The translations under genes were made by a program, and so were the position numbers. A stretch of 63,193 bases of DNA, the filler included, from Dugesia japonica (lineage: Eukaryota): NCBI GenBank assembly GCA_001938525.1. It is 6 parts of 6 records of this genome, joined end to end, with 100 filler letters (N's around TTAATTAATTAA, not from the genome) between each part and the next. Parts side by side here need not be neighbours in the genome. Positions count along the whole stretch, not along the records: positions 32,291 to 43,190 come from MQRL01612179.1; 5 more parts are not named here. One strand, written 5' to 3'. Every line of letters begins with the position of its first letter. The first letter of the stretch is position 1. Under the pieces are notes generated by a model that ran no database searches, was not told the origin of the DNA, and saw only the letters and a list, made by a program, of their open reading frames with translations. Positions 32,291-43,190 of the stretch are shown piece after piece.

Positions 32291-32616
32291 CGTAAGAGTC
32301 TGTGACATCTCCTGATATTATTAGGTAATTGAACTCTAGGCACTAAAATATAAGAACATTAAGTGGACGTAAGGTAGGTCAAAATTTCACACAATTCTAT
32401 CATTACCAACAAGCTTAAAACTCAAATTGATCAAGTAACAAAAATTCATATTTATATTCACACAAAAGACAAGATCAGGGTCGAGAAGCATTTTTAGTTT
32501 GTGTGCCCTTATCAATCATAAGGGGCTCAAGATAGGACTTATCTTTTAACAACAAAATGTCNNNNNNNNNNNNNNNNNNNNNNNNNNNNNNNNNNNNNNN
32601 NNNNNNNNNNNNNNNN

Positions 32617-33388
32617 TCGACTTGGGCCTTCCAGGCTCATTCCTGCTCTTGGACAAGCCGCATCTCTTCGCGAATACTGGTACACTTATTTTTGTACCTT
32701 TTTACTTTCGCGGTTGCAGTTGCTACGTCGGCCTCCCAACGCCGCTTGGCTAGGCGATATAGGCTCCAGGACATCTCTATGTCCACACTATTCTCACTGA
32801 TTTTCTTAGTCGGGGCGGGTGGACGATTTAGTAATGAATGCACTATAGGAAAATAAAGTATGATTAATTCTTATTAAATAGTTAGGCAAATATTCTATTA
32901 AGGTCACAAAGAATTTATTATAATGGATTAAAATAAGACAACACAAATTGAATGTCACATTCTCATAGAGGAAANNNNNNNNNNNNNNNNNNNNNNNNNN
33001 NNNNNNNNNNNNNNNNNNNNNNNNTCCGCGAATGATTCGACTTGGGCCTTCCAGGCTCGTTCCTGTTCTTGGACAAGCCGCATCTCTTCGCGAATACTGG
33101 TACATTTATTTTTGTACCTTTTTACTTTCGCGTTTGCCGTTGCTACGTCGGCCTCCCAACGCCGTTTGGCTAGGCGATATAGACTCCAGGACATCTCCAT
33201 GTCCTCGCTATCTTCGCGGATTTTCTTAGTCGGGGCGGGTGGACGATTTAGTGATGAATGCACTATAGGAAAATAAAGTATGATTAATTCTTATTAAATA
33301 GTTAGGCAAATGTTTTATTAAGGTCACAAAGAATTATAATGAATTAAAATAAGACAACACAAATTGAATGTCAAATTCTCATAGAGGA
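32617..33388 (-). repeat. Diverged ~355-bp tandem duplication carrying a coiled-coil exon-like ORF
   Basis: 32617-32972 matches 33037-33388 with many substitutions; acceptor ttattttcctatag precedes NRPPAPTKK...WSLYRLAKRRWEADVA. Confidence 0.85.
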
Positions 33389-33469
33389 GACACAGAAAGA
33401 AAAAATTATAAGTTCTCCCTAGACATATTTTCGTCATTTCGATAATTACATCACTGTTTACATCTCACT

Positions 33470-34100
33470 TCTAACCGTCTAAAATAACCAATCTTTTTAC
33501 AAACAGAACATTTTGTTGGTTTTTTATTTGGACAATGTCGACTTATATGTCCTGTTTTACGAAAATTCTGGCACTCTTTCACTTTTTTGGTTGGACAATT
33601 TGCTTTAGTATGACCGATCTTTAGACATAAACACCATTCAATATTTTGTTTTTCTTCTCTTCGATTGAATAAAAATTGTCAAGATAATTTTTTTCAATCT
33701 AACATCAACCAATGAAAATGTTTTAGCTATACTGATCTCCAATTGGTCGCNCATCAATTTTCTATTTTTCATTACCAGAAAGAGGTTCCGGATCGAGTCC
33801 GTTAAATTTTATAATAATCCTATATTTTAATAGAATAGTCAACAATTCTCGTTATAACTTATTTACTATGTTTAATGTATTTTAATTAATTGTTTCATTT
33901 GAATTTTATCCCTCAAACTTTCACAACATGTAATTTCCACATTATCATTTATTAGAATGATTTCGCATCATTTGAAATGATTTGTGGTTTTTACTTTGAT
34001 TCGTATTCTAATACAACATATTCATTTTCTGTCATTATTTTACCGATTTGATAGATTTACATGTTACTCAGTTTTACTTGGGTATTTTGCCCACTTTATA
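33470..34100 (-). mobile_element. Decayed gag-like / non-LTR ORF1 with three CCHC zinc knuckles
   Basis: CLCLKIGHTKANCP, CQNFRKTGHISRHCP and CSVCKKIGY near 33490-33640; stops upstream. Confidence 0.7.
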
Positions 34101-34601
34101 TTAATTCTGATTCATAACAATGATTGAACTCAATGTTGTTCATTATTTCATAATCTATTAAATACTGATTTATACATCTTTACATCATTTAACATTTCAC
34201 TATCGTAAATTATTGACTGGGATATTTAAAATTCATTATACAATTTTTCCTTTCAATAAATTTTATTTTGGTTTTCTATTTATATTAATATACATCTTTA
34301 CATTACTATCTAGACATGTAAATACTGTTACAAAGATGTCTAATATTGTTTGAGCATTTATAAAAATTTAAGTGATATGTAATTTTATTACTAATTTAAT
34401 TTTTCATTTCCTATTTTTTATTCCTACTTCTTAATACGACTATTTATATCTGATTTACCTTTTTATTTGATCTATGGATATCTTTATATCCATAGATTTT
34501 TATATTATCATTATATAACTTTATATATAAAAGTAATAGAGAAACAACGATTTGACGTCGAGGGGCTACCCTTTAAAAGAAACGATTTAAATTCGGGGTG
34601 A

Positions 34602-34792
34602 AAATGTGAAATGTAATATGCAAATATGTGAAATGTAATATGCAAATATGTCATATGTCATATGTAATATGCAAATATGTAATATGCAAAATGTGAAATG
34701 TAATATGTAATATGCAAATATGTGAAATGTAATATGCAAATATGTCATATGTAATATGCAAATATGTAATATGCAAAATGTAAAATGTAAAT
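34602..34792. repeat. Subterminal 7-9-bp higher-order tandem repeat
   Basis: Mixed units aatgtga / aatatgt / aatatgca / catatgt; a block of about 85-90 bp is repeated twice. Confidence 0.9.
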
Positions 34793-34896
34793 CCTATATC
34801 TCGCGCTTTAAATTTGCGCATTATTTATAATAAATCCTCTTAAATAACAAAATATCCTCTTTTTACTCTCTATGATTAAATTAATTCTATATAAAA

Positions 34897-37800
34897 ATGC
34901 CAACGGAAATAATGCTGTGTGATAATTGTAATAAAACATTTAAAAATAAAGCCGGACTAAAAGGGCATCTCGCATCTAGAACTTGTTATAAAGATGCAAC
35001 ATTTTAATGTGAAAAATGTAATAAATCATTTAAAAGAGAAAGTGATTTACGGTCACATTTAAATACATCAAGTTGTGGAAACAATGAAATTTTCCCATTA
35101 TTCTGTGAAATTTGTGATAAAGCATTTAAAAAACAAAATAATGCAAGAATACATTTTAATTCTTTAAACCACAAAGAAAAAGTTATTAAATTAAATTTTG
35201 ACCAACTTCCAGGTGAAGAAGCAATTGATTACTCAGTAGAAATAAGAGAAGCATTAAGAATGTATAAATATCACAAAATAACTTATTTTTTAGAAAGTAA
35301 AGTGGAAATGTTTTATGATGCCGAGGATTATCCTTTTCCAATTAGAGATATTTTTTGGTTTAAAGATGAAGTAAGACAAATTGTTATGAAATATTATAAA
35401 TGTGTAAAACAACCAATTATAAGTATGATAGTAACATGTAGATATGAAAAAGATGATACTGAAAGAAATTTTAAATCATATTCAATTAATAAAACAATTA
35501 CAATTAAAAGTGAAATTAATAGCCGTGTCAATGAAATGTTTAATGATTTAGATAAATATATTGAAGATGATGATCTTGAAGGTTCGGGTTGGACAATGAT
35601 GTTTATTACTGACTATACTTTATATTTAAGTAAATATCAAGCAAAAGCCGGAGCAACATATATTAAATTACCATTTAAAAAACCAGGTGTAATCAACATA
35701 GAAAATAAAGATGATAATAAATGTTTTCTATATTCAATTCTAGCATATAAACACGTATTTGATAATCCAACACGTGTAACTAATTACATTCCATATTTAT
35801 CAGAATTAAAATATTCAGATTTTACATTTCCTATGAGCATCGGCGAAATACATTTATTCGAGAAATTAAATAACTATAAAATAAATGTTTTCGGTGTAGA
35901 TGCTAACAAGAAACTTGAACCACTTTACATTTCACATCACATATCAAAACCTTCAACAGAAGAAAATAAATGTAATCTCTTGATATATAAAGATCATTAT
36001 GTTCTATGTCGAGATCTAACCACANTTTTTACAAGAAACAAAAATAAAAATTATCCATGCATACGATGCACGAATTGTTATTCAACTGAAGAACTCCTAA
36101 TTAAACATCAAGAAGCATGCATTAACCATAGACCAAATAACATTGTATTTGATTTTAAAAATTATTATTTCTTTAATAAATTTTATCAGAAAAATAAAAT
36201 ACCTTTCATATTAATAGGTGATTTTGAAGCATACACAAATTCAAATAAAAAACAAAAAGCATTATCATTAGGAATTTATCTTCACAGTGAGCACCAAGAA
36301 TTATTAGAATCTAAATATTATTGTTTTACAGGTGAAAATATTTATCTAGAATTCTTTGAATTTTTAAATGACATTAATAATAAATTAGAAGATATAAAAG
36401 AAAATAAATTAATATTAGAATTCTCAGGAACATATCCCAAATTCGAAAATCAATTATGTTTTTATTGTGATAAAGAAATAAAAGAGAATCCAGTTATAGA
36501 CCATAATCATTTCACAAATGAATTCCGTGGTTATGCACATGAAAAATGTAATTTATATGATTTTAGTGTAAAAAATCTATTCATCCCATTTTANTTTCAT
36601 AACGCATCCGGCTATGATAATCATTTATTTTTCAGAGAACTACTAACAAAATTTCCAGGAAAAGTAAAAAAGATAATTCCACATACATCAGATAATTATA
36701 TTTCATTTCAATATGAAAATATTAAATTCCTAGATTCAGCTAGATTACTACCATTCACATCTATAGAAACAATGGGTAATTTATTAACATCTTCCAATAA
36801 ATATCCAATATTAACATCATTTAACCTTAGACCAAAGAAAGNATTATTTCCATATGAATATGTAAAAGGAAACACTATCCAAGAAGTCATAAAATTATTA
36901 AAATCAAATCGAACACCAACTAGAAAAGATTTCTTTAATACACTAACACAAAAAGAAATATCTAACGAAGACTATGATAAATTTTTAATAGATTATTTAG
37001 ATTTTAAAAATCTCTGGGATTACATGCTACATTACATGAAACTTGATGTTTTAATTCTAACTGATTTCTTGGAAAATTTTAGAAATTCATGTTTAAATAA
37101 TCTTCTTAGATTAGATCCTTGTTATTCATATTCTGCACCAGGATATTCATGGGAAACTGGAATGTTAAATGCAAATATTTACTTAAAATATGCTAAACCT
37201 GAAACCTATGATTTATTCTTATTAATTGAATCAGGAATACGCGGTGGCTATTCAGGTGTCTTAGGTGAACGTCAAGTCTTTTCAAATAATAAAATCTCAA
37301 ATCCTAGTTTTGGTAGTAACAGACGATTAAATAAAACACAAGTCTCTGAGATATTATATTCATTAATTAAAAATAAAACTCCACCAATAGATTGGAAAGA
37401 AGAAACATTTATAAAATATATAGATGAAAATTCTCTTTATGCATCATGCATGACAAGACCATTACCAACAGGTGAACTTGTTAATTGTGAAGATTTAATA
37501 TATGAACCACCAACTGAAAATATGAATTTTATCTACGAAGTTGATTTAGAATATCCTAAAGAAATCCATGATAAAACTAAATATTTTCCATTAGCACCAG
37601 AGAGAATAAATATTACAGAAGATATGTTAAGTAATTATCAAAAAAGTTTTAACAAGAAAATATCAAAAGATAATATTAAACTAACTCTTAATCAATTTAA
37701 CAAGAAAAATTATACAGTTCTTGGATCAACTTTAGATCTCTATTTAAAACTAGGAATGAAACTTACAAAAGTTCATAAGAAAATTCAAATGCCAGTTTCT

Positions 37801-39413
37801 ACATGGTTTAAAGATTATGTTCATAGATTAATATCCCTAAGAAAAGAATCTAAAAGAATTAAAGATGTCTTTGGAGATTATATTTATAAATTAATGTTAA
37901 ATGCCTTCTATGGCAAAACACTAGAAAATATTAGAAATCGATGTAACATAGAAATTGTTGATACCGACAAAGATTATCAAAGACTTGCAGCTAAACCAAC
38001 ATTTAAATCATCTAAAATCTTTAGTATAAATGATTCAAATGAAGCCACAGTTGCAGCAATGCAAATGATAAAAGGAAAATTAAAATATAATAAATTTCCA
38101 TATATTGGATTCACAATCCTCGAATATGCAAAAGAAGTTATGTATGATTTTGTATACAATCAAATGCAACCGTTGATTGGTGAAGATAACTATAAAATTC
38201 ATTACACCGACAGTGTTACCCATGACACTCCAATATTACTAAGAAAAGATCGCGAAGCTCATCAAAAAGGAAATAATAAAGTTGAAATAAAAAAGATTTC
38301 AGAAATATCAACATGTTATGAGAAAAATATTTATGACGGGAAATATTATTCTTATCCTGAAAACCTTGAAATATGGACTAAAAGTAATTGGGTTCCACTG
38401 AAAAAAGTAATTAAACATACTACAATTAAAAAGATTTACAGAGTCAGAACACATCTTGGAATTGTTGATGTAACAGAAGATCATTCATTATTAAATGATA
38501 ACAATATAGAAATTAAACCAACAGATTTAACATTAAACCCTAAATTATTACATAATAAATTTAAAACATTAATATCTTTAAATAATACATTTTCATGTGA
38601 CATTTTAAATAAAACAATTCAAGATAAAATATCTTTATCTAAAGCTTATTATTTAGGAACATCTTTAGGAATGAATTTAATTATTACAGAAGACAAACCA
38701 AATTGTTTCGATTTAAAAGAATCAACTGGAGAAATTGAAACTAATGTCCAAACCGTAAGATTTTTAAGAGAAAATCTAGAAGATGTATACGACATTGAAA
38801 CTGAAGATGGAACATTTAACTGTGGATTTCCATTGATAATAAAAAATACGGACTGTATCTTTGTTGAAATAAAAAACAGAGATAATTTAATAAAATTAGA
38901 AAGCCTACTTGGTGATAATTTATTTCAAATGAAAGATGAAAAACCTAATTGTGAAATAACTCAAGGTAATTTTATAAAANNNNNNNNNNNNNNNNNNNNN
39001 NNNNNNNNNNNNNNNNNNNNNNNNNNNNNCCTAATTGTGAAATAACTCAAGGTAATTTTATAAAAGCAAAATCTTATGCTTATTCATATGCAAGCACAGG
39101 AGATATGGGCTATGATTTTAGAAATAAAGGTGTCAAGAAAAATAATAAATTATTAATGACAGATTTTGATTCAGTATTAAATGATCCTAAGAAAATAATT
39201 TATGGAACAAATTATTCATTAAAATCAGATTGCCATGAAATTGAATTAATTTCACAAAAGAAAATTGCATTAATGGCCTATGATGATAAAAGAATAATAG
39301 AAGATGATGCAACAAAAACATGGCCACATGGAAATCAATATCTCTGTTCTTTGTGCACACAATGGCATTTAAGATTAGATAAAATAAATCACTGCACTTC
39401 TTGCTCTCGTTAG
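34897..39413 (+). CDS. polB: Protein-primed DNA polymerase B polyprotein with N-terminal zinc fingers and an intein (about 1476 codons after closing the false gap; one in-frame TAA)
   Basis: Exo motifs GDFEA, FHNASGYD, FLDS; pol motifs YIDENSLY, KLMLNAFYGK, YTD/TDC, KAKSY, KGVKK, YDDKR. ATG 34897 is in frame with 35260. 38944-38979 is repeated at 39030-39065, so ORF 39105-39413 is the C-terminus. Confidence 0.95.
36457..36552 (+). other. Endonuclease VII-like His-Me finger inserted in the exonuclease domain
   Basis: CFYC...VIDHNHFTNEFRGYAHEKCN fits CxxC-DHxH-RG-H-xxCN, common in one Polinton pPolB group. Confidence 0.85.
38212..38847 (+). mobile_element. Mini-intein (212 aa) in pPolB motif C
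   Basis: Starts SVTHDTPILLR (block A); has VTEDHSLL (block B TxxH) and VYDIETEDGTF (block F); ends IIKN followed by Thr+1; removal restores HYTDTDCIF. Confidence 0.95.
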
Positions 39414-39450
39414 ACAAAATATAAAAATGTAAATATTTTAAATAAAGAAA

Positions 39451-40236
39451 ATGTCATAAGCAACAGAAGAAGAATTAATTAAAATTGTAAATTCTAAAAA
39501 ATGTAAATCTGTAAAAATAAATGGTAAAAATTATTATATCTCCAAAAAAGTTAAAGATGAAGCCAAAAAAGCTAGCGAAGCCCATAAAGGAGGTAATAAA
39601 GAAGGTGGATTTGCATTCTTAGCTGCCATACCATGGGTAATTGGCGCTTTAGCAAGTTCAGCTGGAGTTGCATCTGGTATTGCAAATACAGTTGCAAATT
39701 CTAGAGCCGCTCAGGCACAAGCTTTGGAAAAAATCAATAAACAAAAACAAGGTGAATTAATTGAATTACAAAAACAAAGAACCATAAAGGAATCTGCTCC
39801 AGTTTCAACTACAAGCGAAGCCAACAAACAAACATCTGGAACTGGAATTAAAAACCATAAAGATAAAAACCAGCGAAGCCAAAAACCACAAGGGCAACAA
39901 ACAAAAACCCATAAAGGAAGAAAGTGCACAAATAAAGGCAAAAATCATAAAGACAAAAACCATAAAGGCAAAGGAATATTTTTAAATCCATATCAAGGCA
40001 CAGCAATTCATAAATATTTAAAAAATATTGATCCTAAATTTAAACTCCTAACTAAAAAATTTAAAAAAGGAACCCACATAATTCAACATGGCCGTGGAAT
40101 ATATTTAAATCCATATGCAACACATAAAGGTGGAGAAATAGAAGATGAAATTGATGAAGATGAAACTGAAACTGAAACCGAAGATGATGAAACTGAAACC
40201 GAAACCGAAACAGAAACAGAAACTGAAAATCCATAA
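39451..40236 (+). CDS. Adenovirus pX/core-like virion protein (in-frame TAA at codon 3)
   Basis: Frame of ORF 39724 extends upstream to ATG 39451; KEGG-FAFLAAIPWVIGALASSAGVASGIA resembles the adenain-cleaved pX hydrophobic segment; GKGIFLNPY and GRGIYLNPY repeats; acidic (ET)n tail. Confidence 0.75.
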
Positions 40237-40278
40237 TGCTGGAAATTAAATCTTTATAAAAGAACCATAAAGGAGATA

Positions 40279-41247
40279 ATGTATGCTAGAATTAAAGAAT
40301 TAAAAGCTTTAATTAAAGCTCAAGAAGAATATAATGATTATTTTTCTAATAAAATTCTTGATTATAATACTTTACAAACTAACTTATCCACTTTACAAAA
40401 ACCAACAATAACTGCATTAGAAAAACTTACATTAGAACCAACAATAAAAACAGAACCCATAACAACAGAACCAGAAATTGATTTATTTAAAAAAGATGTA
40501 ATTACTCTCACATTACTTGCGTCTAAAGATGTATCACCATTTAAACCTGATAATTTAACAATAAATAATACAAACATATCACCAACAATAATTCCACAAT
40601 TTGATGAAATACCTGTAACACCAGATAAAACTTACACAAGATTATTTTTTAACCAAACAAGTGTATCAATATTTTTCTTTATAATTAAAGATATAAAACA
40701 TTTATCAATAAATAATAAAATTTATGAAGATGAATATCAAGATAAATTTGTTGATTTAATGATGGGTAATCTACATACAGATTATACTTTATATGAAAAA
40801 GATGATATTTTAAGAAAGTTTATACTTATATATTTAACAGAAATAATAAAACCACCCCCGAGAAATAATTATTGTGAATTTTTTAAAGTAATATCTGGAT
40901 ATGATAAAATTAAAAGAAAAAAAAGTAAAATTGAACAGACAGATCTTGATAAAGCTTTTAAAAAACAAGAAATAGAAGATGCTAATCAAATTTTAAAAAA
41001 AGAAAAAGAAATGGAAGAGGAACATATAGAAAAAAGAAGGGTACAAAGTGGAAAAGGCAACAAAAACCATAACAACAACAATCCAATTGCATTATTTGAA
41101 AAGTTAACATTGTTAATTTCAGCTGTAAAATCTGGACATAATAATCTCTCATCTGAAATTAAATCTCTGTGTAAAAATTTAAAATCTCAAGGTTTATTAT
41201 CTAACAAGATATATAAAAAATATAAAATGAAATATTTCAAAAATTAA
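40279..41247 (+). CDS. Conserved Polinton-associated protein, 322 aa
   Basis: Intact ORF; C-terminal GKG...NPIALFEKLTLLISAVKSGHNNLSSEIKSL matches the Polinton DPNELxxRLxLLxxxxxAGN-NEI motif as I recall it. Confidence 0.75.
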   Translation: MYARIKELKALIKAQEEYNDYFSNKILDYNTLQTNLSTLQKPTITALEKLTLEPTIKTEPITTEPEIDLFKKDVITLTLLASKDVSPFKPDNLTINNTNISPTIIPQFDEIPVTPDKTYTRLFFNQTSVSIFFFIIKDIKHLSINNKIYEDEYQDKFVDLMMGNLHTDYTLYEKDDILRKFILIYLTEIIKPPPRNNYCEFFKVISGYDKIKRKKSKIEQTDLDKAFKKQEIEDANQILKKEKEMEEEHIEKRRVQSGKGNKNHNNNNPIALFEKLTLLISAVKSGHNNLSSEIKSLCKNLKSQGLLSNKIYKKYKMKYFKN

Positions 41248-41300
41248 ATAAACAAAATAGCGAAGCAAAAACAAAAATCCATAAAGGAAGAAAGTGCATT

Positions 41301-42096
41301 ATGTCTCATCAATTCTTAGTAGTTGGAAAAGAACAAGATTTAAAAGTAAATTTAGATTATCCTATAAAATTAGATTCAGAATATGAACTTGGCATGTTAT
41401 ATTTTTTATGTTACAATATTATATTTAACATCACCAATTTAAATAATAAATTTATTATCAATGGAATTGAACAAGAAAAAACCGGAGCCATAAAGGCCGA
41501 AGGAGCCATAAAAACCGAAGGAGCCATAAAAACCGAAGGAGCCATAAAGTCCGAAGGAACCGAAGGAGCCATAAAAGAAAAAACAATAAAAAAAATTAGA
41601 ACCAGGATCTTATGAAGTAAAAGAAATATCAAAACGTTTAGAAAAACATCTTGAAATTACACCTGATCTTGCAACATCTAAATGTAACATGAAAATATTA
41701 ACTAAAAACACTCTAGAGTTTGATAATAAATCATTCTTCCATGGAATCCTAGGATTTAAACCTGGAAAATATGAACCTGGTAATTATTATTCAGATACTA
41801 AAATTGACATTATAAATTCTAACGCGTTAAATATTACATGCAATATTGTTAAAGGTAATTATTCTACTAATAATCAACAAACAAGAAATATTAATCTTTT
41901 ATATTCATTTCCAATAAATACAGTTCCATTTGGATATAAAATAGTAGAAAGGCCATCACCAGCTATTTATTCTAAAATTAACACAGATTACATCGATGGT
42001 TTTAAATTTAATATCGTAGATGAAAATTTTAACACAATAGATTTTAACCAAGAAACAATTACAATTTTAGTTCATCTACGTAAGTATCGACTTTAA
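41301..42096 (+). CDS. Minor capsid (penton) protein, split by a +1 frameshift in A8 at 41588-41595
   Basis: PIKLDSEYELGM..YNIIFNITNLNNKF, then LEPGSYEV, ILGF, ITCNIVKGNY, VPFGYKIVERP, IVDEN..IDFNQETITILVHLR. Confidence 0.85.
41481..41576 (+). repeat. 18-bp in-frame tandem repeat (GAIKTE) inside the penton gene
   Basis: About 5 copies of ccgaaggagccataaaaa. Confidence 0.92.
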
Positions 42097-42136
42097 AACT
42101 TAAAACTTAAAACTGATATTTAATAAATAGCGAAGA

Positions 42137-42622
42137 ATGAGCGAACATAGAGGACAGAATTTTTGTTTATTAGATTTTTTAAAAACATTTGGAATTAACA
42201 CAACAACAAATTTTGATTTATATTCAATTGCTAACTTTTTAAAAATGCCATTAGAAATTTACATGAAAAATGAGACACCTAAGATATTACCTTCAAAGAA
42301 TATGAATTTTATTTTTAATTATCAAAATTCAAATCAAAATGGAACACATTGGACAGCCTATTATGAAAGATATTATTTTGATTCTTTTGGTTTAAAACCA
42401 TTAAAAGAAATCCCGGGTGTAAAAGTTTATAATAAAATTCAAGTGCAACATTTTAACACTGAAATATGCGGCATTTTATGTATTTATTTTTTATATAAGA
42501 TCCAATATGTAAAATTTAATCTAACGAAAGCAAGGAGTGCATTTGATACTATTATATCTGAAATGAAATCTTTATGTAATGAGCTACGCGAAACCATAAA
42601 AGGAGATGAAATAGTCGAATGA
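42137..42622 (+). CDS. Adenain-type cysteine (maturation) protease
   Basis: GTHWTAY (His), YFDSFG (Asp), QVQ (Gln), ICGILCIYFL (Cys). Confidence 0.93.
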   Translation: MSEHRGQNFCLLDFLKTFGINTTTNFDLYSIANFLKMPLEIYMKNETPKILPSKNMNFIFNYQNSNQNGTHWTAYYERYYFDSFGLKPLKEIPGVKVYNKIQVQHFNTEICGILCIYFLYKIQYVKFNLTKARSAFDTIISEMKSLCNELRETIKGDEIVE

Positions 42623-42687
42623 AATCACTTTATAATTCAATATTAGAAAATAGCGAATAAAAATCCATAAAGGAAGAAAGGAAGAAG

Positions 42688-43190
42688 ATGAATAAGTTTG
42701 GTGCTACTGCTGATTCCGGTGATTCAACAGATTTATTAAAAAGTGTTGATGCTAAAATTAGAACCTTAGATGCGACAAATGAAAATAAATATGTAAATGA
42801 AACTGGTGACACAATTACATCTTTAAAAATAAAAGAAGACCCTAAGGATCTTCAAGATGCAGTTAATTTAAAATACATAAAGAAATCAGAAGAAGATAAT
42901 TTAAAATACATAAAGACTCTTGAAGATAAAATACAAAAACATGAAATAATATTCAGTAGATTATTAAAAGTTGATGGTTTCACAGCAAACAAATTATATT
43001 TAGAATCTAAAATTCAAGAATTAAAAACTTTGAATGTTGATATTTCAGGTTTGAATGATAAAATTAAAAAATTAACAAAATCTTGTAACCAAGAAACATT
43101 TGACAAAATCAACACCGAAATTAAAAGATTAAAATTATCAGTTTTTCCATTTAAAAAAAGTGATTTATTAGTTAAATTAAAAGAAATAAA
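42688..43190 (+). CDS. Fibre-like coiled-coil protein, 3' truncated
   Basis: MNKFG start, KYVNETGDTI and PKDLQDAVNLKYI motifs resemble viral fibre/stalk repeats, followed by heptads. Confidence 0.6.

What the first reader, a model, noticed from the sequence alone, without database searches (positions are those of the whole stretch)
38212..38847. Self-splicing mini-intein in the active site of a Polinton/Maverick DNA polymerase within an animal-like genome
Seen: the catalytic YTDTD motif of the pPolB is split by an uninterrupted 212-codon insert. It has Ser1, block A SVTHDTPILL, block B TEDH, block F VYDIETEDGTF, terminal Lys-Asn and Thr+1. Established: this is the pol-c site (YxD/TDS) used by archaeal and giant-virus family B polymerase inteins. 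Cis-splicing inteins are essentially unknown from animal nuclear genes, which carry only Hint relatives such as Hedgehog. From memory, the sequence closely parallels the mimivirus PolB intein (SVTGDTPI, VIRHKTVKKIYRV, DVTEDHSLL, VYDLETESG, IVKN). Inference: an intein moved from an RNA-primed NCLDV polymerase into a protein-primed Polinton polymerase, possibly during co-infection, and was endogenised, so replication depends on protein splicing. I am not aware of a description of this, but cannot search.
Basis: partly seen in the sequence, partly recalled or inferred. Interest (0 to 1): 0.95.

Follow-up and report, generated by a model that had tools for sequence, protein, structure and literature searches.

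The report
Mini-intein splitting a Polinton DNA polymerase
A 212-residue self-splicing protein insert (intein) of the kind known from giant-virus DNA polymerases sits inside the catalytic motif of the protein-primed polymerase of a Polinton/Maverick-like element.

Summary
Window 38212-38847 is an uninterrupted 212-codon insert between the two catalytic aspartates of motif C (YTD|...|TDC) of a protein-primed family B polymerase (pPolB, PF03175).

- **It is a real intein.** It passes NCBIfam intein_Nterm. It has 1514 relatives in 1.8 billion proteins. Its AlphaFold model (pLDDT 88) matches only solved inteins. It keeps Ser1, block B Thr/His, block F Asp, terminal Asn and Thr+1.
- **It belongs to the giant-virus pol-c family.** 211 of 254 relatives examined sit in RNA-primed PolBs, mostly at YGD|S...KN|TDS. 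Named structural matches are polymerases of Megavirus, Pithovirus, Heterosigma akashiwo virus and others.
- **It is not unique among pPolBs.** Seven other protein clusters, three of them in Polinton-like gene contexts, carry related inteins at this site, all with a homing endonuclease. One 136-member cluster holds both intein-plus and precisely intein-minus alleles.
- **Intein and extein histories disagree.** The closest intein (about 56% identity) sits in a pPolB with no detectable extein similarity. The closest extein relative has no intein.

Not shown: an animal host (only intein-free relatives are named, in a snail and a brittle star), the direction of transfer, and actual splicing.

The parts
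35260..39413 (+). [quoted passage not shown] One part as required. State of this copy: no stop and no frameshift from the ATG through the intein. Three isolated N letters give three X codons. There is one interruption, which coincides with an N run in the C-extein, and the frame differs on its far side.
   Evidence: Pfam PF03175 DNA_pol_B_2 at 2.8e-19. N-extein relatives reach up to 602 bits. The distal C-terminal stretch matches the C-termini of many pPolB relatives.
35260..38211 (+). N-extein (984 codons): exonuclease and palm parts of the pPolB, ending ...HYTD.
36442..36558 (+). HNH / endonuclease VII-like insert inside the N-extein (residues 395-433). It has no Hint domain and is not part of the intein.
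   Evidence: Pfam PF02945 at E = 0.0051, below the cut-off. The same family is precomputed in relatives P0255, P0256, P0258, P0301, P0326 and others. This matches the HNH-bearing 'pPolB2' class of PMC10748475.
38212..38847 (+). Class 1 mini-intein, 212 codons, with no homing endonuclease domain.
38212..38241 (+). Intein block A: Ser1 nucleophile and SVTHDTPILL.
   Evidence: Ser at residue 1 in 123 of 123 aligned relatives.
38464..38490 (+). Intein block B (residues 85-93), with Thr88 and His91.
   Evidence: Thr in 172 of 175 and His in 175 of 175 relatives. These residues are invariant in alignment A1.
38782..38847 (+). Intein blocks F and G (residues 191-212): Asp194, Lys211 in place of the usual penultimate His, and terminal Asn212.
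   Evidence: Asp in 213 of 213, Lys in 132 of 134 and Asn in 117 of 117 relatives.
38848..39413 (+). C-extein, beginning Thr+1 (TDC...). It contains the N run.
34897..35259 (+). Upstream stretch in the frame of the polymerase that encodes three C2H2-like zinc fingers. One stop codon separates it from the polymerase ORF. It may be the true N-terminus or a separate small ORF.
   Evidence: The snail relative carries zf-C2H2 together with Endonuclease_7. No direct similarity to relatives was found.
42137..42622 (+). Probable adenain-like cysteine protease, a typical Polinton gene.
   Evidence: Pfam Peptidase_C5 at E = 0.0054, below the cut-off. Homologues lie in two related Polinton-like loci, L001 and L086. 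A three-sequence profile hits only adenoviral proteinases in the PDB, weakly (E = 0.17-0.37). In those printed alignments the motifs holding His71, Asp82, Gln104 and Cys111 line up with conserved adenain motifs, and all four residues are invariant across the three homologues.
41301..42096 (+). Homologue of a 345-residue ORF of the related Polinton locus L001, function unknown. In this copy it lies in two reading frames (one frame change, or an intron). It contains an 18-nt tandem repeat.
40279..41247 (+). 322-codon ORF of unknown function within the element.
   Evidence: no significant match
33401..35259 (.). AT-rich region (25% G+C) to the left of the polymerase, including a block of overlapping tandem repeats at 34580-34811. 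It probably holds the left terminal region of the element; the exact end is not defined.
32291..33400 (.). Flank of different composition (38.6% G+C) with a 420-bp tandem duplication around N runs. Decayed CCHC zinc-knuckle codons follow on the minus strand at about 33451-33642, in the next part of the sequence. This looks like host chromosomal repeat DNA.

Best explanation
The insert is a genuine class 1 mini-intein of the 'pol-c' lineage that is abundant in giant-virus (Nucleocytoviricota) RNA-primed PolB genes. Here it lodges at the equivalent point of motif C (YxD|TDS) of the protein-primed PolB of a Polinton/Maverick-like element that appears to be integrated in a eukaryotic chromosome.

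Mechanism (inferred). The polymerase is translated as a precursor whose two metal-binding aspartates are 212 residues apart, so the precursor should be inactive. Ser1 makes an N-O acyl shift. Thr+1 attacks the resulting ester. Asn212 cyclises and releases the intein. An O-N shift then restores the motif-C peptide bond. This is an all-oxygen (cysteine-free) splicing chemistry with Lys in place of the usual penultimate His, as in nearly the whole lineage.

Spread (inferred). The intein has no endonuclease, so it cannot home on its own. It now travels with the element, or by recombination between copies. It most likely descends from an endonuclease-bearing form like the one in P0001, and it reached this polymerase by transfer rather than by co-descent.

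Shown: intein identity, fold, site, family, intact catalytic residues, and intein/extein incongruence. Inferred: splicing activity, dependence of the polymerase on splicing, and route of acquisition.
For: - Position and open frame.
- HMM match above the curated cut-off.
- Sequence matches to solved PolB inteins (Nanoarchaeum split intein at E = 0.0015; Aes123 PolB1 only at E = 0.12, not significant).
- 1514 relatives.
- Among 254 relatives, the N junction is YGD|S in 132 of 155 and the C junction is KN|TDS in 138 of 160. Intein sizes range from 200 to 420 residues.
- 211 of 254 relatives are in RNA-primed PolB.
- 506 IMG/VR contigs encode relatives. Of the best 80, 74 are rPolB and many are giant-virus MAGs.
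- AlphaFold model with pLDDT 87.8 and pTM 0.85.
- All top PDB fold matches are inteins.
- The top BFVD matches are giant-virus polymerases with TM-scores of 0.72-0.86.
- The window agrees with the family residue at 27 of 28 columns that are at least 90% conserved, including every catalytic position.
- The extein is a pPolB. Its relatives sit beside rve integrase, Pox_A32 ATPase and a double-jelly-roll capsid gene.
- Other pPolBs carry related inteins at the same site (P0001, P0012, P0014, P0300-P0303).
- The P0014 cluster has intein-plus and exactly intein-minus alleles.
- Incongruence: the intein is 57% and 55% identical to that of P0001, while the exteins are not detectably similar (best E = 0.57). 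The nearest extein relative, P0304 (602 bits), has an uninterrupted motif C.
Against: - Splicing was not observed.
- The penultimate His is replaced by Lys. This is family-wide, so it is probably tolerated.
- Pfam Intein_splicing does not match this copy.
- The last residue of motif C is Cys rather than Ser.
- This copy of the element is not pristine. The polymerase frame is interrupted once at an N run. An upstream in-frame zinc-finger stretch is cut off by one stop. A neighbouring gene lies in two frames. The copy may therefore be decaying.
- Only part of the element is in the piece. No integrase, ATPase or capsid gene and no terminal repeats are seen here.
- Intein G+C equals extein G+C (0.250 against 0.253), so the acquisition is not recent and its source cannot be read from composition.
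Confidence: 0.8

Rival explanations
1. The intein is a dead relic. The copy is a decaying endogenous element whose polymerase is never made or never spliced, and the open frame merely reflects a recent insertion.
For: The element copy shows damage elsewhere: one interruption of the polymerase frame at an N run, one stop ahead of the polymerase ORF, and one frame change in the 41301-42096 gene. The intein has no homing endonuclease, which is the usual late stage of the intein life cycle.
Against: About 1240 codons are open in 25% G+C DNA (p = 5e-53 by chance). All catalytic residues are intact, and 27 of 28 highly conserved columns are kept. The same 36-nt string stands on both sides of the N run and is in frame with the ORF on each side, so that interruption may belong to the assembly rather than the gene.
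Confidence: 0.17
2. The host is not an animal. The piece comes from a protist genome, from a protist or virus contaminating an animal assembly, or from a free Polinton-like virus.
For: The source could not be identified. No window protein is on record, and no near-identical polymerase exists in the 5.8-billion-protein collection. The giant viruses that hold most relatives of the intein infect protists. Several intein-bearing pPolB relatives come from marine or unlabelled metagenome assemblies.
Against: The left flank changes composition (38.6% against 25% G+C). It carries a 420-bp tandem duplication and decayed CCHC knuckles, as chromosomal repeat DNA does, so a free virus is unlikely. Intein-free relatives of this polymerase clade are annotated in Biomphalaria glabrata and Amphiura filiformis on chromosome-size contigs. 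One intein-bearing relative lies on a 2.5-kb contig binned with a clam-gill symbiont. None of this names the host of this piece.
Confidence: 0.35
3. One reading: the intein jumped directly from a giant-virus RNA-primed PolB into this Polinton lineage during co-infection.
For: The family is hundreds of times more frequent in giant-virus PolBs than in pPolBs. After P0001, the next nearest inteins are in RNA-primed PolBs or in proteins left unclassed, at about 50-57% identity over the aligned blocks.
Against: The nearest intein by a wide margin is in another pPolB (172 bits against at most 129 bits). It pairs with the window intein in 153 of 200 bootstraps on the N part and 80 of 200 on the C part. 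Monophyly of all pPolB inteins is neither supported nor excluded (10 and 20 of 200 bootstraps, yet they form one clade in the C-part point tree). The last step was therefore more likely from pPolB to pPolB. Junction DNA gives no donor signal.
Confidence: 0.2

Closest known systems
Giant-virus PolB 'pol-c allele' inteins: Mimivirus PolB intein (Ogata et al. 2005, PMC549080) and those of Megavirus courdo11, Heterosigma akashiwo virus 01, Pithovirus LCPAC302, Klosneuvirus and Marseillevirus LCMAC201
   Same: The same sequence family and fold (BFVD TM-scores 0.72-0.86). The same insertion point between the Asp and Thr of motif C. Ser1 and Thr+1. Lys-Asn end in 132 of 134 relatives.
   Different: Their extein is an RNA-primed, delta-like PolB (PF00136 and PF03104). 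Here it is a protein-primed PolB (PF03175), whose N-extein shows no detectable similarity to an RNA-primed PolB (no rPolB in the N-extein search; no cross-hits between the two classes). The Mimivirus intein has 351 residues and a homing endonuclease; this one has 212 and none. The carrier is a Polinton-like integrated element, not a giant virus.
Uncharacterised pPolB inteins found here (P0001; the P0014 cluster of 136 members and P0012; P0300-P0303)
   Same: The same site in motif C of a pPolB. Polinton-like gene context where context is visible (rve and DJR capsid in L001, DJR capsid in L086). P0001 is the nearest intein (57% and 55% identity).
   Different: All of them carry a LAGLIDADG/Hom_end endonuclease and have about 346-350 residues where both ends could be placed. 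All except P0001 end in His-Asn. The P0001 extein is not detectably similar to the window's extein.
HNH and VSR nuclease inserts in Polinton pPolB2 (Jeong et al. 2023, PMC10748475; read as traces of intein invasion in PMC11161782)
   Same: These are also selfish-nuclease-type inserts in Polinton polymerases. The window polymerase belongs to this HNH-bearing class.
   Different: Those inserts have no Hint domain, are not at motif C, and are not proposed to be spliced out. The insert here is a complete Hint splicing domain without a nuclease.
Solved PolB and mini-inteins: Nanoarchaeum equitans split Pol intein (5oxw), Aes123 PolB1 cysteine-less split intein (9hth), TFIIB Mvu mini-intein (5o9i)
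   Same: The HINT fold. For 9hth, Ser-based cysteine-free chemistry as its entry title states and a PolB host.
   Different: Two of them are split, trans-splicing inteins of archaea or phages. Sequence identity over the structural alignments is 14-16% (9hth, 5o9i); 5oxw matched only by sequence, over residues 25-95.
Hedgehog/Hog Hint domains of animals
   Same: A distant HINT fold (1at0 and 6tyy at E about 7e-3).
   Different: Hedgehog domains are C-terminal autoprocessing modules with no C-extein ligation and no terminal Asn/+1 nucleophile pair. The insert here has both splice junctions.

Membership tests
Intein (class 1, HINT superfamily) | In-frame insertion inside a conserved site of a host protein, with the host frame continuing on both sides | tested here: met
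   HYTD|intein|TDC within a pPolB ORF. Intein-free relatives have a contiguous YxDTDS or FxDTDS.
Intein (class 1, HINT superfamily) | Nucleophile (Cys/Ser) at residue 1 and Ser/Thr/Cys at +1 | tested here: met
   Ser1 and Thr+1. Ser1 in 123 of 123 relatives.
Intein (class 1, HINT superfamily) | Block B Thr-x-x-His | tested here: met
   Thr88 and His91.
Intein (class 1, HINT superfamily) | Block F Asp and C-terminal Asn | tested here: met
   Asp194 and Asn212.
Intein (class 1, HINT superfamily) | Penultimate His (block G) | tested here: not met
   Lys211. Lys is the family residue here (132 of 134). From general knowledge, inteins without this His are known to splice, so this is not disqualifying.
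Intein (class 1, HINT superfamily) | Match to curated intein HMMs | tested here: met
   TIGR01445 at 26.2 bits against a cut-off of 24.5. Pfam PF14890 gives no hit on this copy, although relatives match it.
Intein (class 1, HINT superfamily) | HINT fold | tested here: met
   AlphaFold pLDDT 87.8. Of the 29 PDB matches at E <= 1e-3, 28 are inteins and one is a bacterial intein-like domain.
Intein (class 1, HINT superfamily) | Protein splicing actually occurs | not testable with these tools
   No expression or proteomic data are available.
pol-c allele of family B polymerase inteins | Insertion between Asp and Thr of motif C (YxD|TDS) | tested here: met
   Window YTD|TDC. Relatives have YGD|S in 132 of 155 and KN|TDS in 138 of 160. 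The site is defined in PMC549080.
pol-c allele of family B polymerase inteins | Closest sequence relatives are inteins at that same site | tested here: met
pol-c allele of family B polymerase inteins | Extein is an RNA-primed family B polymerase (archaeal PolI or viral/eukaryotic delta-like) | tested here: not met
   The extein is PF03175, protein-primed. This is the novel aspect.
Polinton/Maverick element | Protein-primed PolB | tested here: met
   Relatives lie in Polinton contexts.
Polinton/Maverick element | Retroviral-type (rve) integrase | tested here: inconclusive
   None was found in 32291-43190. The piece ends inside the element, so the gene may lie beyond it.
Polinton/Maverick element | Double-jelly-roll major capsid protein and A32-type packaging ATPase | tested here: inconclusive
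   No match in the piece. Both are present next to related polymerases.
Polinton/Maverick element | Adenain-like cysteine protease | tested here: inconclusive
   ORF 42137-42622: Peptidase_C5 at E = 0.0054, below the cut-off. Only adenain appears in the PDB, at E = 0.17. His, Asp, Gln and Cys are invariant in three homologues. The single-sequence AlphaFold model was too poor to use.
Polinton/Maverick element | Long terminal inverted repeats and 6-bp target-site duplication | not testable with these tools
   The right end lies outside the piece. No convincing inverted repeat is present within it.
Animal nuclear genome as host | Element joined to identifiable animal DNA | tested here: inconclusive
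   The flank is repeat-like DNA of different composition with no diagnostic gene. Rfam finds nothing. Only relatives are named, in a snail and a brittle star.

The most novel reading that the evidence does not exclude
This is a resident, still splicing-competent intein in an animal nuclear genome, carried by a Polinton. It belongs to an intein lineage that moves between giant-virus RNA-primed polymerases and Polinton/virophage-like protein-primed polymerases, using only the shared catalytic motif as its landing site. Inteins would then mark gene flow between giant viruses and the small DNA elements that share cells with them. The statement that metazoan genomes lack inteins would need qualifying.
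Probability: 0.35. Interest if true: 0.8.

Novelty: new variant of a known kind. Interest (0 to 1): 0.62.

Why it matters
1. It extends a well-known intein lineage to a different class of polymerase. RNA-primed and protein-primed PolBs share little beyond the catalytic motifs. Occupancy of the same point in both shows that this site is effectively defined by motif C. It also gives a concrete case for how inteins cross between very distant homologues, the puzzle raised for Mimivirus against archaea in PMC549080.

2. The intein/extein incongruence, and the intein-plus and intein-minus alleles inside one Polinton family, show that inteins are, or recently were, mobile among Polinton polymerases. 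They are also shared with giant viruses. This fits a shared cellular arena, although the direction of transfer is open.

3. A survey of eukaryotic inteins states that metazoan genomes lack them and uses this to justify intein inhibitors as antimicrobials (PMC5784728). If the host is an animal, this is an exception, though in a selfish element rather than a host gene.

4. A compact intein with Ser1, Thr+1 and no catalytic cysteine, from a presumably mesophilic eukaryotic setting, is of the type sought for protein engineering.

Tried and rejected
- **Pfam-A on the insert:** no hit even at E <= 10. NCBIfam and the large searches settled the question instead.
- **Rfam on the piece:** nothing.
- **Exact look-up of a window ORF:** not on record, so the source assembly stays unknown.
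- **Pfam on flank ORFs:** only sub-threshold coiled-coil and zinc-knuckle hits, which do not identify a host.
- **Kapitonov and Jurka 2006, Krupovic and Koonin 2015, Feschotte and Pritham 2007:** not held. I could not check my vague recollection that inteins were mentioned early for Polintons.
- **Single-sequence AlphaFold of the protease-like ORF:** pLDDT 40. It was unusable, so no fold search was run on it.
- **Co-conversion footprint idea.** The five codons at the junction all end in G or C, in a gene with GC3 = 0.146. Other intein-plus pPolBs use GAT/ACxGAT, and giant-virus flanks vary freely at synonymous positions. I dropped the idea as evidence and kept it as a curiosity.
- **Neighbour-joining bootstraps, run separately on the N and C splicing parts:** they do not resolve one or several origins for pPolB inteins.
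- **Alternative genetic code (TAA read as a residue).** I considered this because of the in-frame stop upstream. I rejected it because the 1240 codons that follow contain no such stop.
- **No contig was taken for human.**
Full report
**1. The observation**

The piece (32291-43190) contains one long ORF that starts at 35260. Translated, it reads straight through 38212-38847. The junctions are HYTD|SVTHDTPILL...GFPLIIKN|TDCIF.

The DNA is 25% G+C, so a random codon is a stop with p = 0.0925. A run of 212 open codons has p = 1.2e-9, and the roughly 1240 open codons of the polymerase up to the N run have p = 5e-53.

**2. The insert is an intein**

- Pfam-A gives nothing on the insert.
- NCBIfam TIGR01445 (intein N-terminal splicing region) scores 26.2 bits against a curated cut-off of 24.5.
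- A sequence search of the PDB finds the Nanoarchaeum equitans split polymerase intein at E = 0.0015; the Aes123 PolB1 intein appears only at E = 0.12, which is not significant.
- A full HMMER pass over 1.84 billion representative proteins finds 1514 relatives at E <= 1e-3 and 675 at E <= 1e-10.
- An AlphaFold2 model built on a 14-sequence alignment has mean pLDDT 87.8 and pTM 0.85. The only low-confidence segment is residues 124-127.
- In Foldseek against the PDB, 28 of the 29 matches at E <= 1e-3 are inteins and one is a bacterial intein-like domain. The best is the TFIIB Mvu mini-intein at 4.7e-8, followed by the Aes123 PolB1 cysteine-less intein, Pab PolII and RadA. Hedgehog appears only at about 7e-3.
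- Compared column by column with relatives, the window has the family residue at 27 of the 28 columns that are at least 90% conserved. The catalytic positions are Ser1 (123/123), Thr88 (172/175), His91 (175/175), Asp194 (213/213), Lys211 (132/134) and Asn212 (117/117).
- The usual penultimate His is therefore replaced by Lys across the whole lineage, not only in this copy.

**3. Which intein family**

I located the splice junctions in 254 relatives.
- The N junction is YGD|S in 132 of 155 cases.
- The C junction is KN|TDS in 138 of 160 cases.
- This is the pol-c site of RNA-primed family B polymerases, as defined for Mimivirus (YGD/TDS) by Ogata et al. 2005 (PMC549080).
- Intein sizes run from 200 to 420 residues. 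One group of minis has about 213-235 residues, and a larger group with a homing endonuclease has about 360.

By similarity of their exteins, 211 of the 254 are RNA-primed PolBs, 3 are pPolBs and 40 are fragments or other proteins, including type II topoisomerases.

In IMG/VR, 506 viral contigs encode relatives. Of the best 80, 74 carry an RNA-primed PolB and none carries a pPolB. Many are giant-virus metagenome bins.

Foldseek against BFVD names the best matches as polymerases of Pithovirus LCPAC302, Megavirus courdo11 (a mimivirid), Heterosigma akashiwo virus 01, Marseillevirus LCMAC201, a phycodnavirus fragment, Klosneuvirus and Pandoravirus hades, with TM-scores of 0.72-0.86.

**4. The extein and the element**

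The ORF matches Pfam DNA_pol_B_2 (PF03175) at 2.8e-19. It also has a sub-threshold endonuclease VII/HNH match at residues 395-433. This fits the HNH-bearing 'pPolB2' class described in nematode, oomycete and mollusc Polintons (PMC10748475).

N-extein relatives are at most about 40% identical. Where their context is visible, they sit next to typical Polinton genes:
- rve integrase (L001, L003, L004);
- Pox_A32 ATPase (L003);
- a double-jelly-roll capsid gene (L001, L086).

Downstream ORFs in the window support the same picture.
- ORF 42137-42622 has homologues in L001 and L086. It has a sub-threshold Peptidase_C5 match. As a three-sequence profile it hits only adenoviral proteinases in the PDB, at E = 0.17-0.37. 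In those printed alignments the motifs holding His71, Asp82, Gln104 and Cys111 line up with conserved adenain motifs, and the four residues are invariant in the three homologues. It is probably the Polinton protease.
- The gene at 41301-42096 matches a 345-residue ORF of L001.

No integrase, ATPase or capsid gene lies in the piece, which ends inside the element.

**5. State of the genes in this copy**

- **Polymerase:** no stop and no frameshift from its ATG through the intein. Three single-N codons. One interruption that coincides with an N run in the C-extein, beyond which the frame differs. The stretch beyond it matches the C-termini of many pPolB relatives, so the gene runs to 39413. The same 36-nt string stands on both sides of the N run (family D9) and is read in frame with the ORF on each side. 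The interruption may therefore belong to the assembly.
- **Upstream stretch 34897-35259:** it lies in the polymerase frame and encodes three C2H2-like fingers. One stop separates it from the polymerase ORF. The snail relative combines zf-C2H2 with Endonuclease_7, so this stretch may be the real N-terminus.
- **Gene at 41301-42096:** it lies in two frames, with one frame change.

**6. Other intein-bearing pPolBs**

The searches returned seven other pPolB protein clusters with a related intein at the same point of motif C.
- P0001 has junctions YLD|S...KN|TDS and a LAGLIDADG endonuclease.
- P0012 and P0014 carry an endonuclease as well; P0014 has junctions YMD|S...HN|TDS (P0012's junctions were not read out).
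- P0300, P0301, P0302 and P0303 all end in HN|TDS and carry an endonuclease.

P0014 stands for 136 near-identical proteins on many contigs of 0.1-1 Mb. That cluster holds 1537-residue intein-plus forms. It also holds forms of roughly 900-1190 residues that lack exactly residues 1042-1387. In these forms the motif reads FDTDA, GDTDA or TDCDS. This is the presence/absence polymorphism expected of a mobile intein in a multicopy element.

P0300 is deposited as a protein of a clam-gill symbiont bin (MBV2113503.1) on a 2.5-kb contig. It is almost certainly mis-binned eukaryotic or element DNA.

**7. Intein and extein histories disagree**

- The window intein is 57% (N part) and 55% (C part) identical to the P0001 intein. 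Their N-exteins, 984 and 1110 residues long, show no significant BLASTP similarity; the best E-value is 0.57.
- In P0001 the endonuclease lies between the positions matching window residues 126 and 135. This is the low-confidence linker of the model, as expected if the window form lost the endonuclease.
- The closest extein relative, P0304 (602 bits, 40% identity), has an uninterrupted FSDTDS.
- The next closest relatives, P0301, P0302 and P0014, carry the other (His-Asn) intein type.
- In neighbour-joining bootstraps run separately on the N and C splicing parts, the window and P0001 pair in 153 and 80 of 200 replicates. All pPolB inteins form one group in only 10 and 20 of 200 replicates, although the C-part point tree does unite them.

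The robust conclusion is that the intein moved between divergent pPolBs and belongs to the giant-virus radiation. The number and direction of jumps between polymerase classes remain open.

Intein and extein have the same composition (G+C 0.250 against 0.253; GC3 0.123 against 0.146). The acquisition is therefore old enough to have equilibrated.

**8. Host**

G+C changes from 38.6% (32291-33400) to 25% (33401 onward). The flank holds a 420-bp tandem duplication, and decayed CCHC zinc-knuckle codons lie just inside the AT-rich part on the minus strand. This looks like chromosomal repeat DNA, so a free virus is unlikely.

The organism cannot be named. Nothing from the window is on record, and no near-identical polymerase exists in the collections.

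Intein-free relatives of this polymerase clade are annotated in Biomphalaria glabrata (XP_013067210.2) and Amphiura filiformis (XP_072018277.1). Many more lie on multi-megabase contigs. An animal host is plausible but is not shown.

**9. Literature**

No searchable paper that contains both 'intein' and 'Polinton', 'Maverick' or 'pPolB' describes a Hint-type intein in a Polinton polymerase.
- PMC11161782 remarks that endonuclease inserts in Polinton pPolBs suggest intein invasions. It cites PMC10748475, which reports HNH and VSR domains only.
- The founding Polinton paper is not held.

**10. Verdict**

The object is a new variant of a known kind: a pol-c-lineage mini-intein in a protein-primed Polinton polymerase. 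Splicing competence is likely, because all catalytic residues are intact and the long frame is open, but it is untested.

- While reading the sequence I worked out, in my own reasoning, where the upstream stop and the N run lie.
- Scripts printed labels of sequence pieces whose ends abut those interruptions.
- My reasoning also recalled short motif strings of the adenovirus protease from memory.

Noticed in passing
window 39903-39924, 41273-41294, 42659-42680: An exact 22-nt motif (AAAAAYCCATAAAGGAAGAAAG) occurs three times on the + strand, against 0 expected from shuffles. Two copies end 6-7 nt before the ATGs of ORFs 41301 and 42688. It may be a promoter or leader motif of the element.
   Followed up: partly
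window 34580-34811: A block of overlapping tandem repeats built from ATATGCAAATATGT-like units, about 450 nt upstream of the polymerase ORF. It may be subterminal or regulatory repeats of the element.
   Followed up: no
window 34897-35259: Three C2H2-like zinc fingers are encoded in the polymerase frame just upstream of its ATG, cut off from it by one stop. The Biomphalaria relative of the polymerase has zf-C2H2 fused to the HNH-bearing polymerase.
   Followed up: partly
window, C-extein of the polymerase (within 38848-39413): The N run is bracketed by two identical 36-nt strings (repeat finder family D9), each in frame with the ORF on its own side. This looks like overlapping contig ends rather than a real gap.
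   Followed up: partly
window 38200-38211 and 38848-38856: The five extein codons that abut the intein (TAC ACC GAC / ACG GAC) all end in G or C, in a gene with GC3 = 0.146. This could be a co-conversion footprint, but other intein-plus pPolBs and giant-virus PolBs show no shared junction DNA.
   Followed up: yes
window 41484-41573: An 18-nt tandem repeat (about five units) lies inside the gene at 41301-42096 and encodes a repeated hexapeptide.
   Followed up: no
window 32617-33388: A 420-bp tandem duplication (94-96% identity) in the flank, with each copy next to an N run. One open frame on the minus strand looks like a coiled coil. Three decayed CCHC knuckles follow at about 33451-33642 (minus strand).
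   Followed up: partly
P0014 cluster (for example L001 10001-14614; P0289-P0294): One 90%-identity pPolB cluster of 136 members, on many 0.1-1 Mb contigs, holds both intein-plus alleles and precisely intein-minus alleles. The intein-minus alleles have altered residues at the insertion site (FDTDA, GDTDA, TDCDS).
   Followed up: partly
P0300 (NCBI MBV2113503.1): A pPolB fragment with an intein and LAGLIDADG endonuclease is deposited as a protein of a clam-gill sulphur-oxidising symbiont bin, on a 2.5-kb contig. It is probably mis-binned host or element DNA.
   Followed up: no
P0039, P0085, P0089, P0355: The same intein lineage also occurs in type II topoisomerase / gyrase B-like proteins. Junctions such as DQD|S, DSD|S and EGD|S, seen among the non-polymerase relatives, were not assigned to particular proteins. 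The lineage is therefore not confined to polymerases.
   Followed up: no
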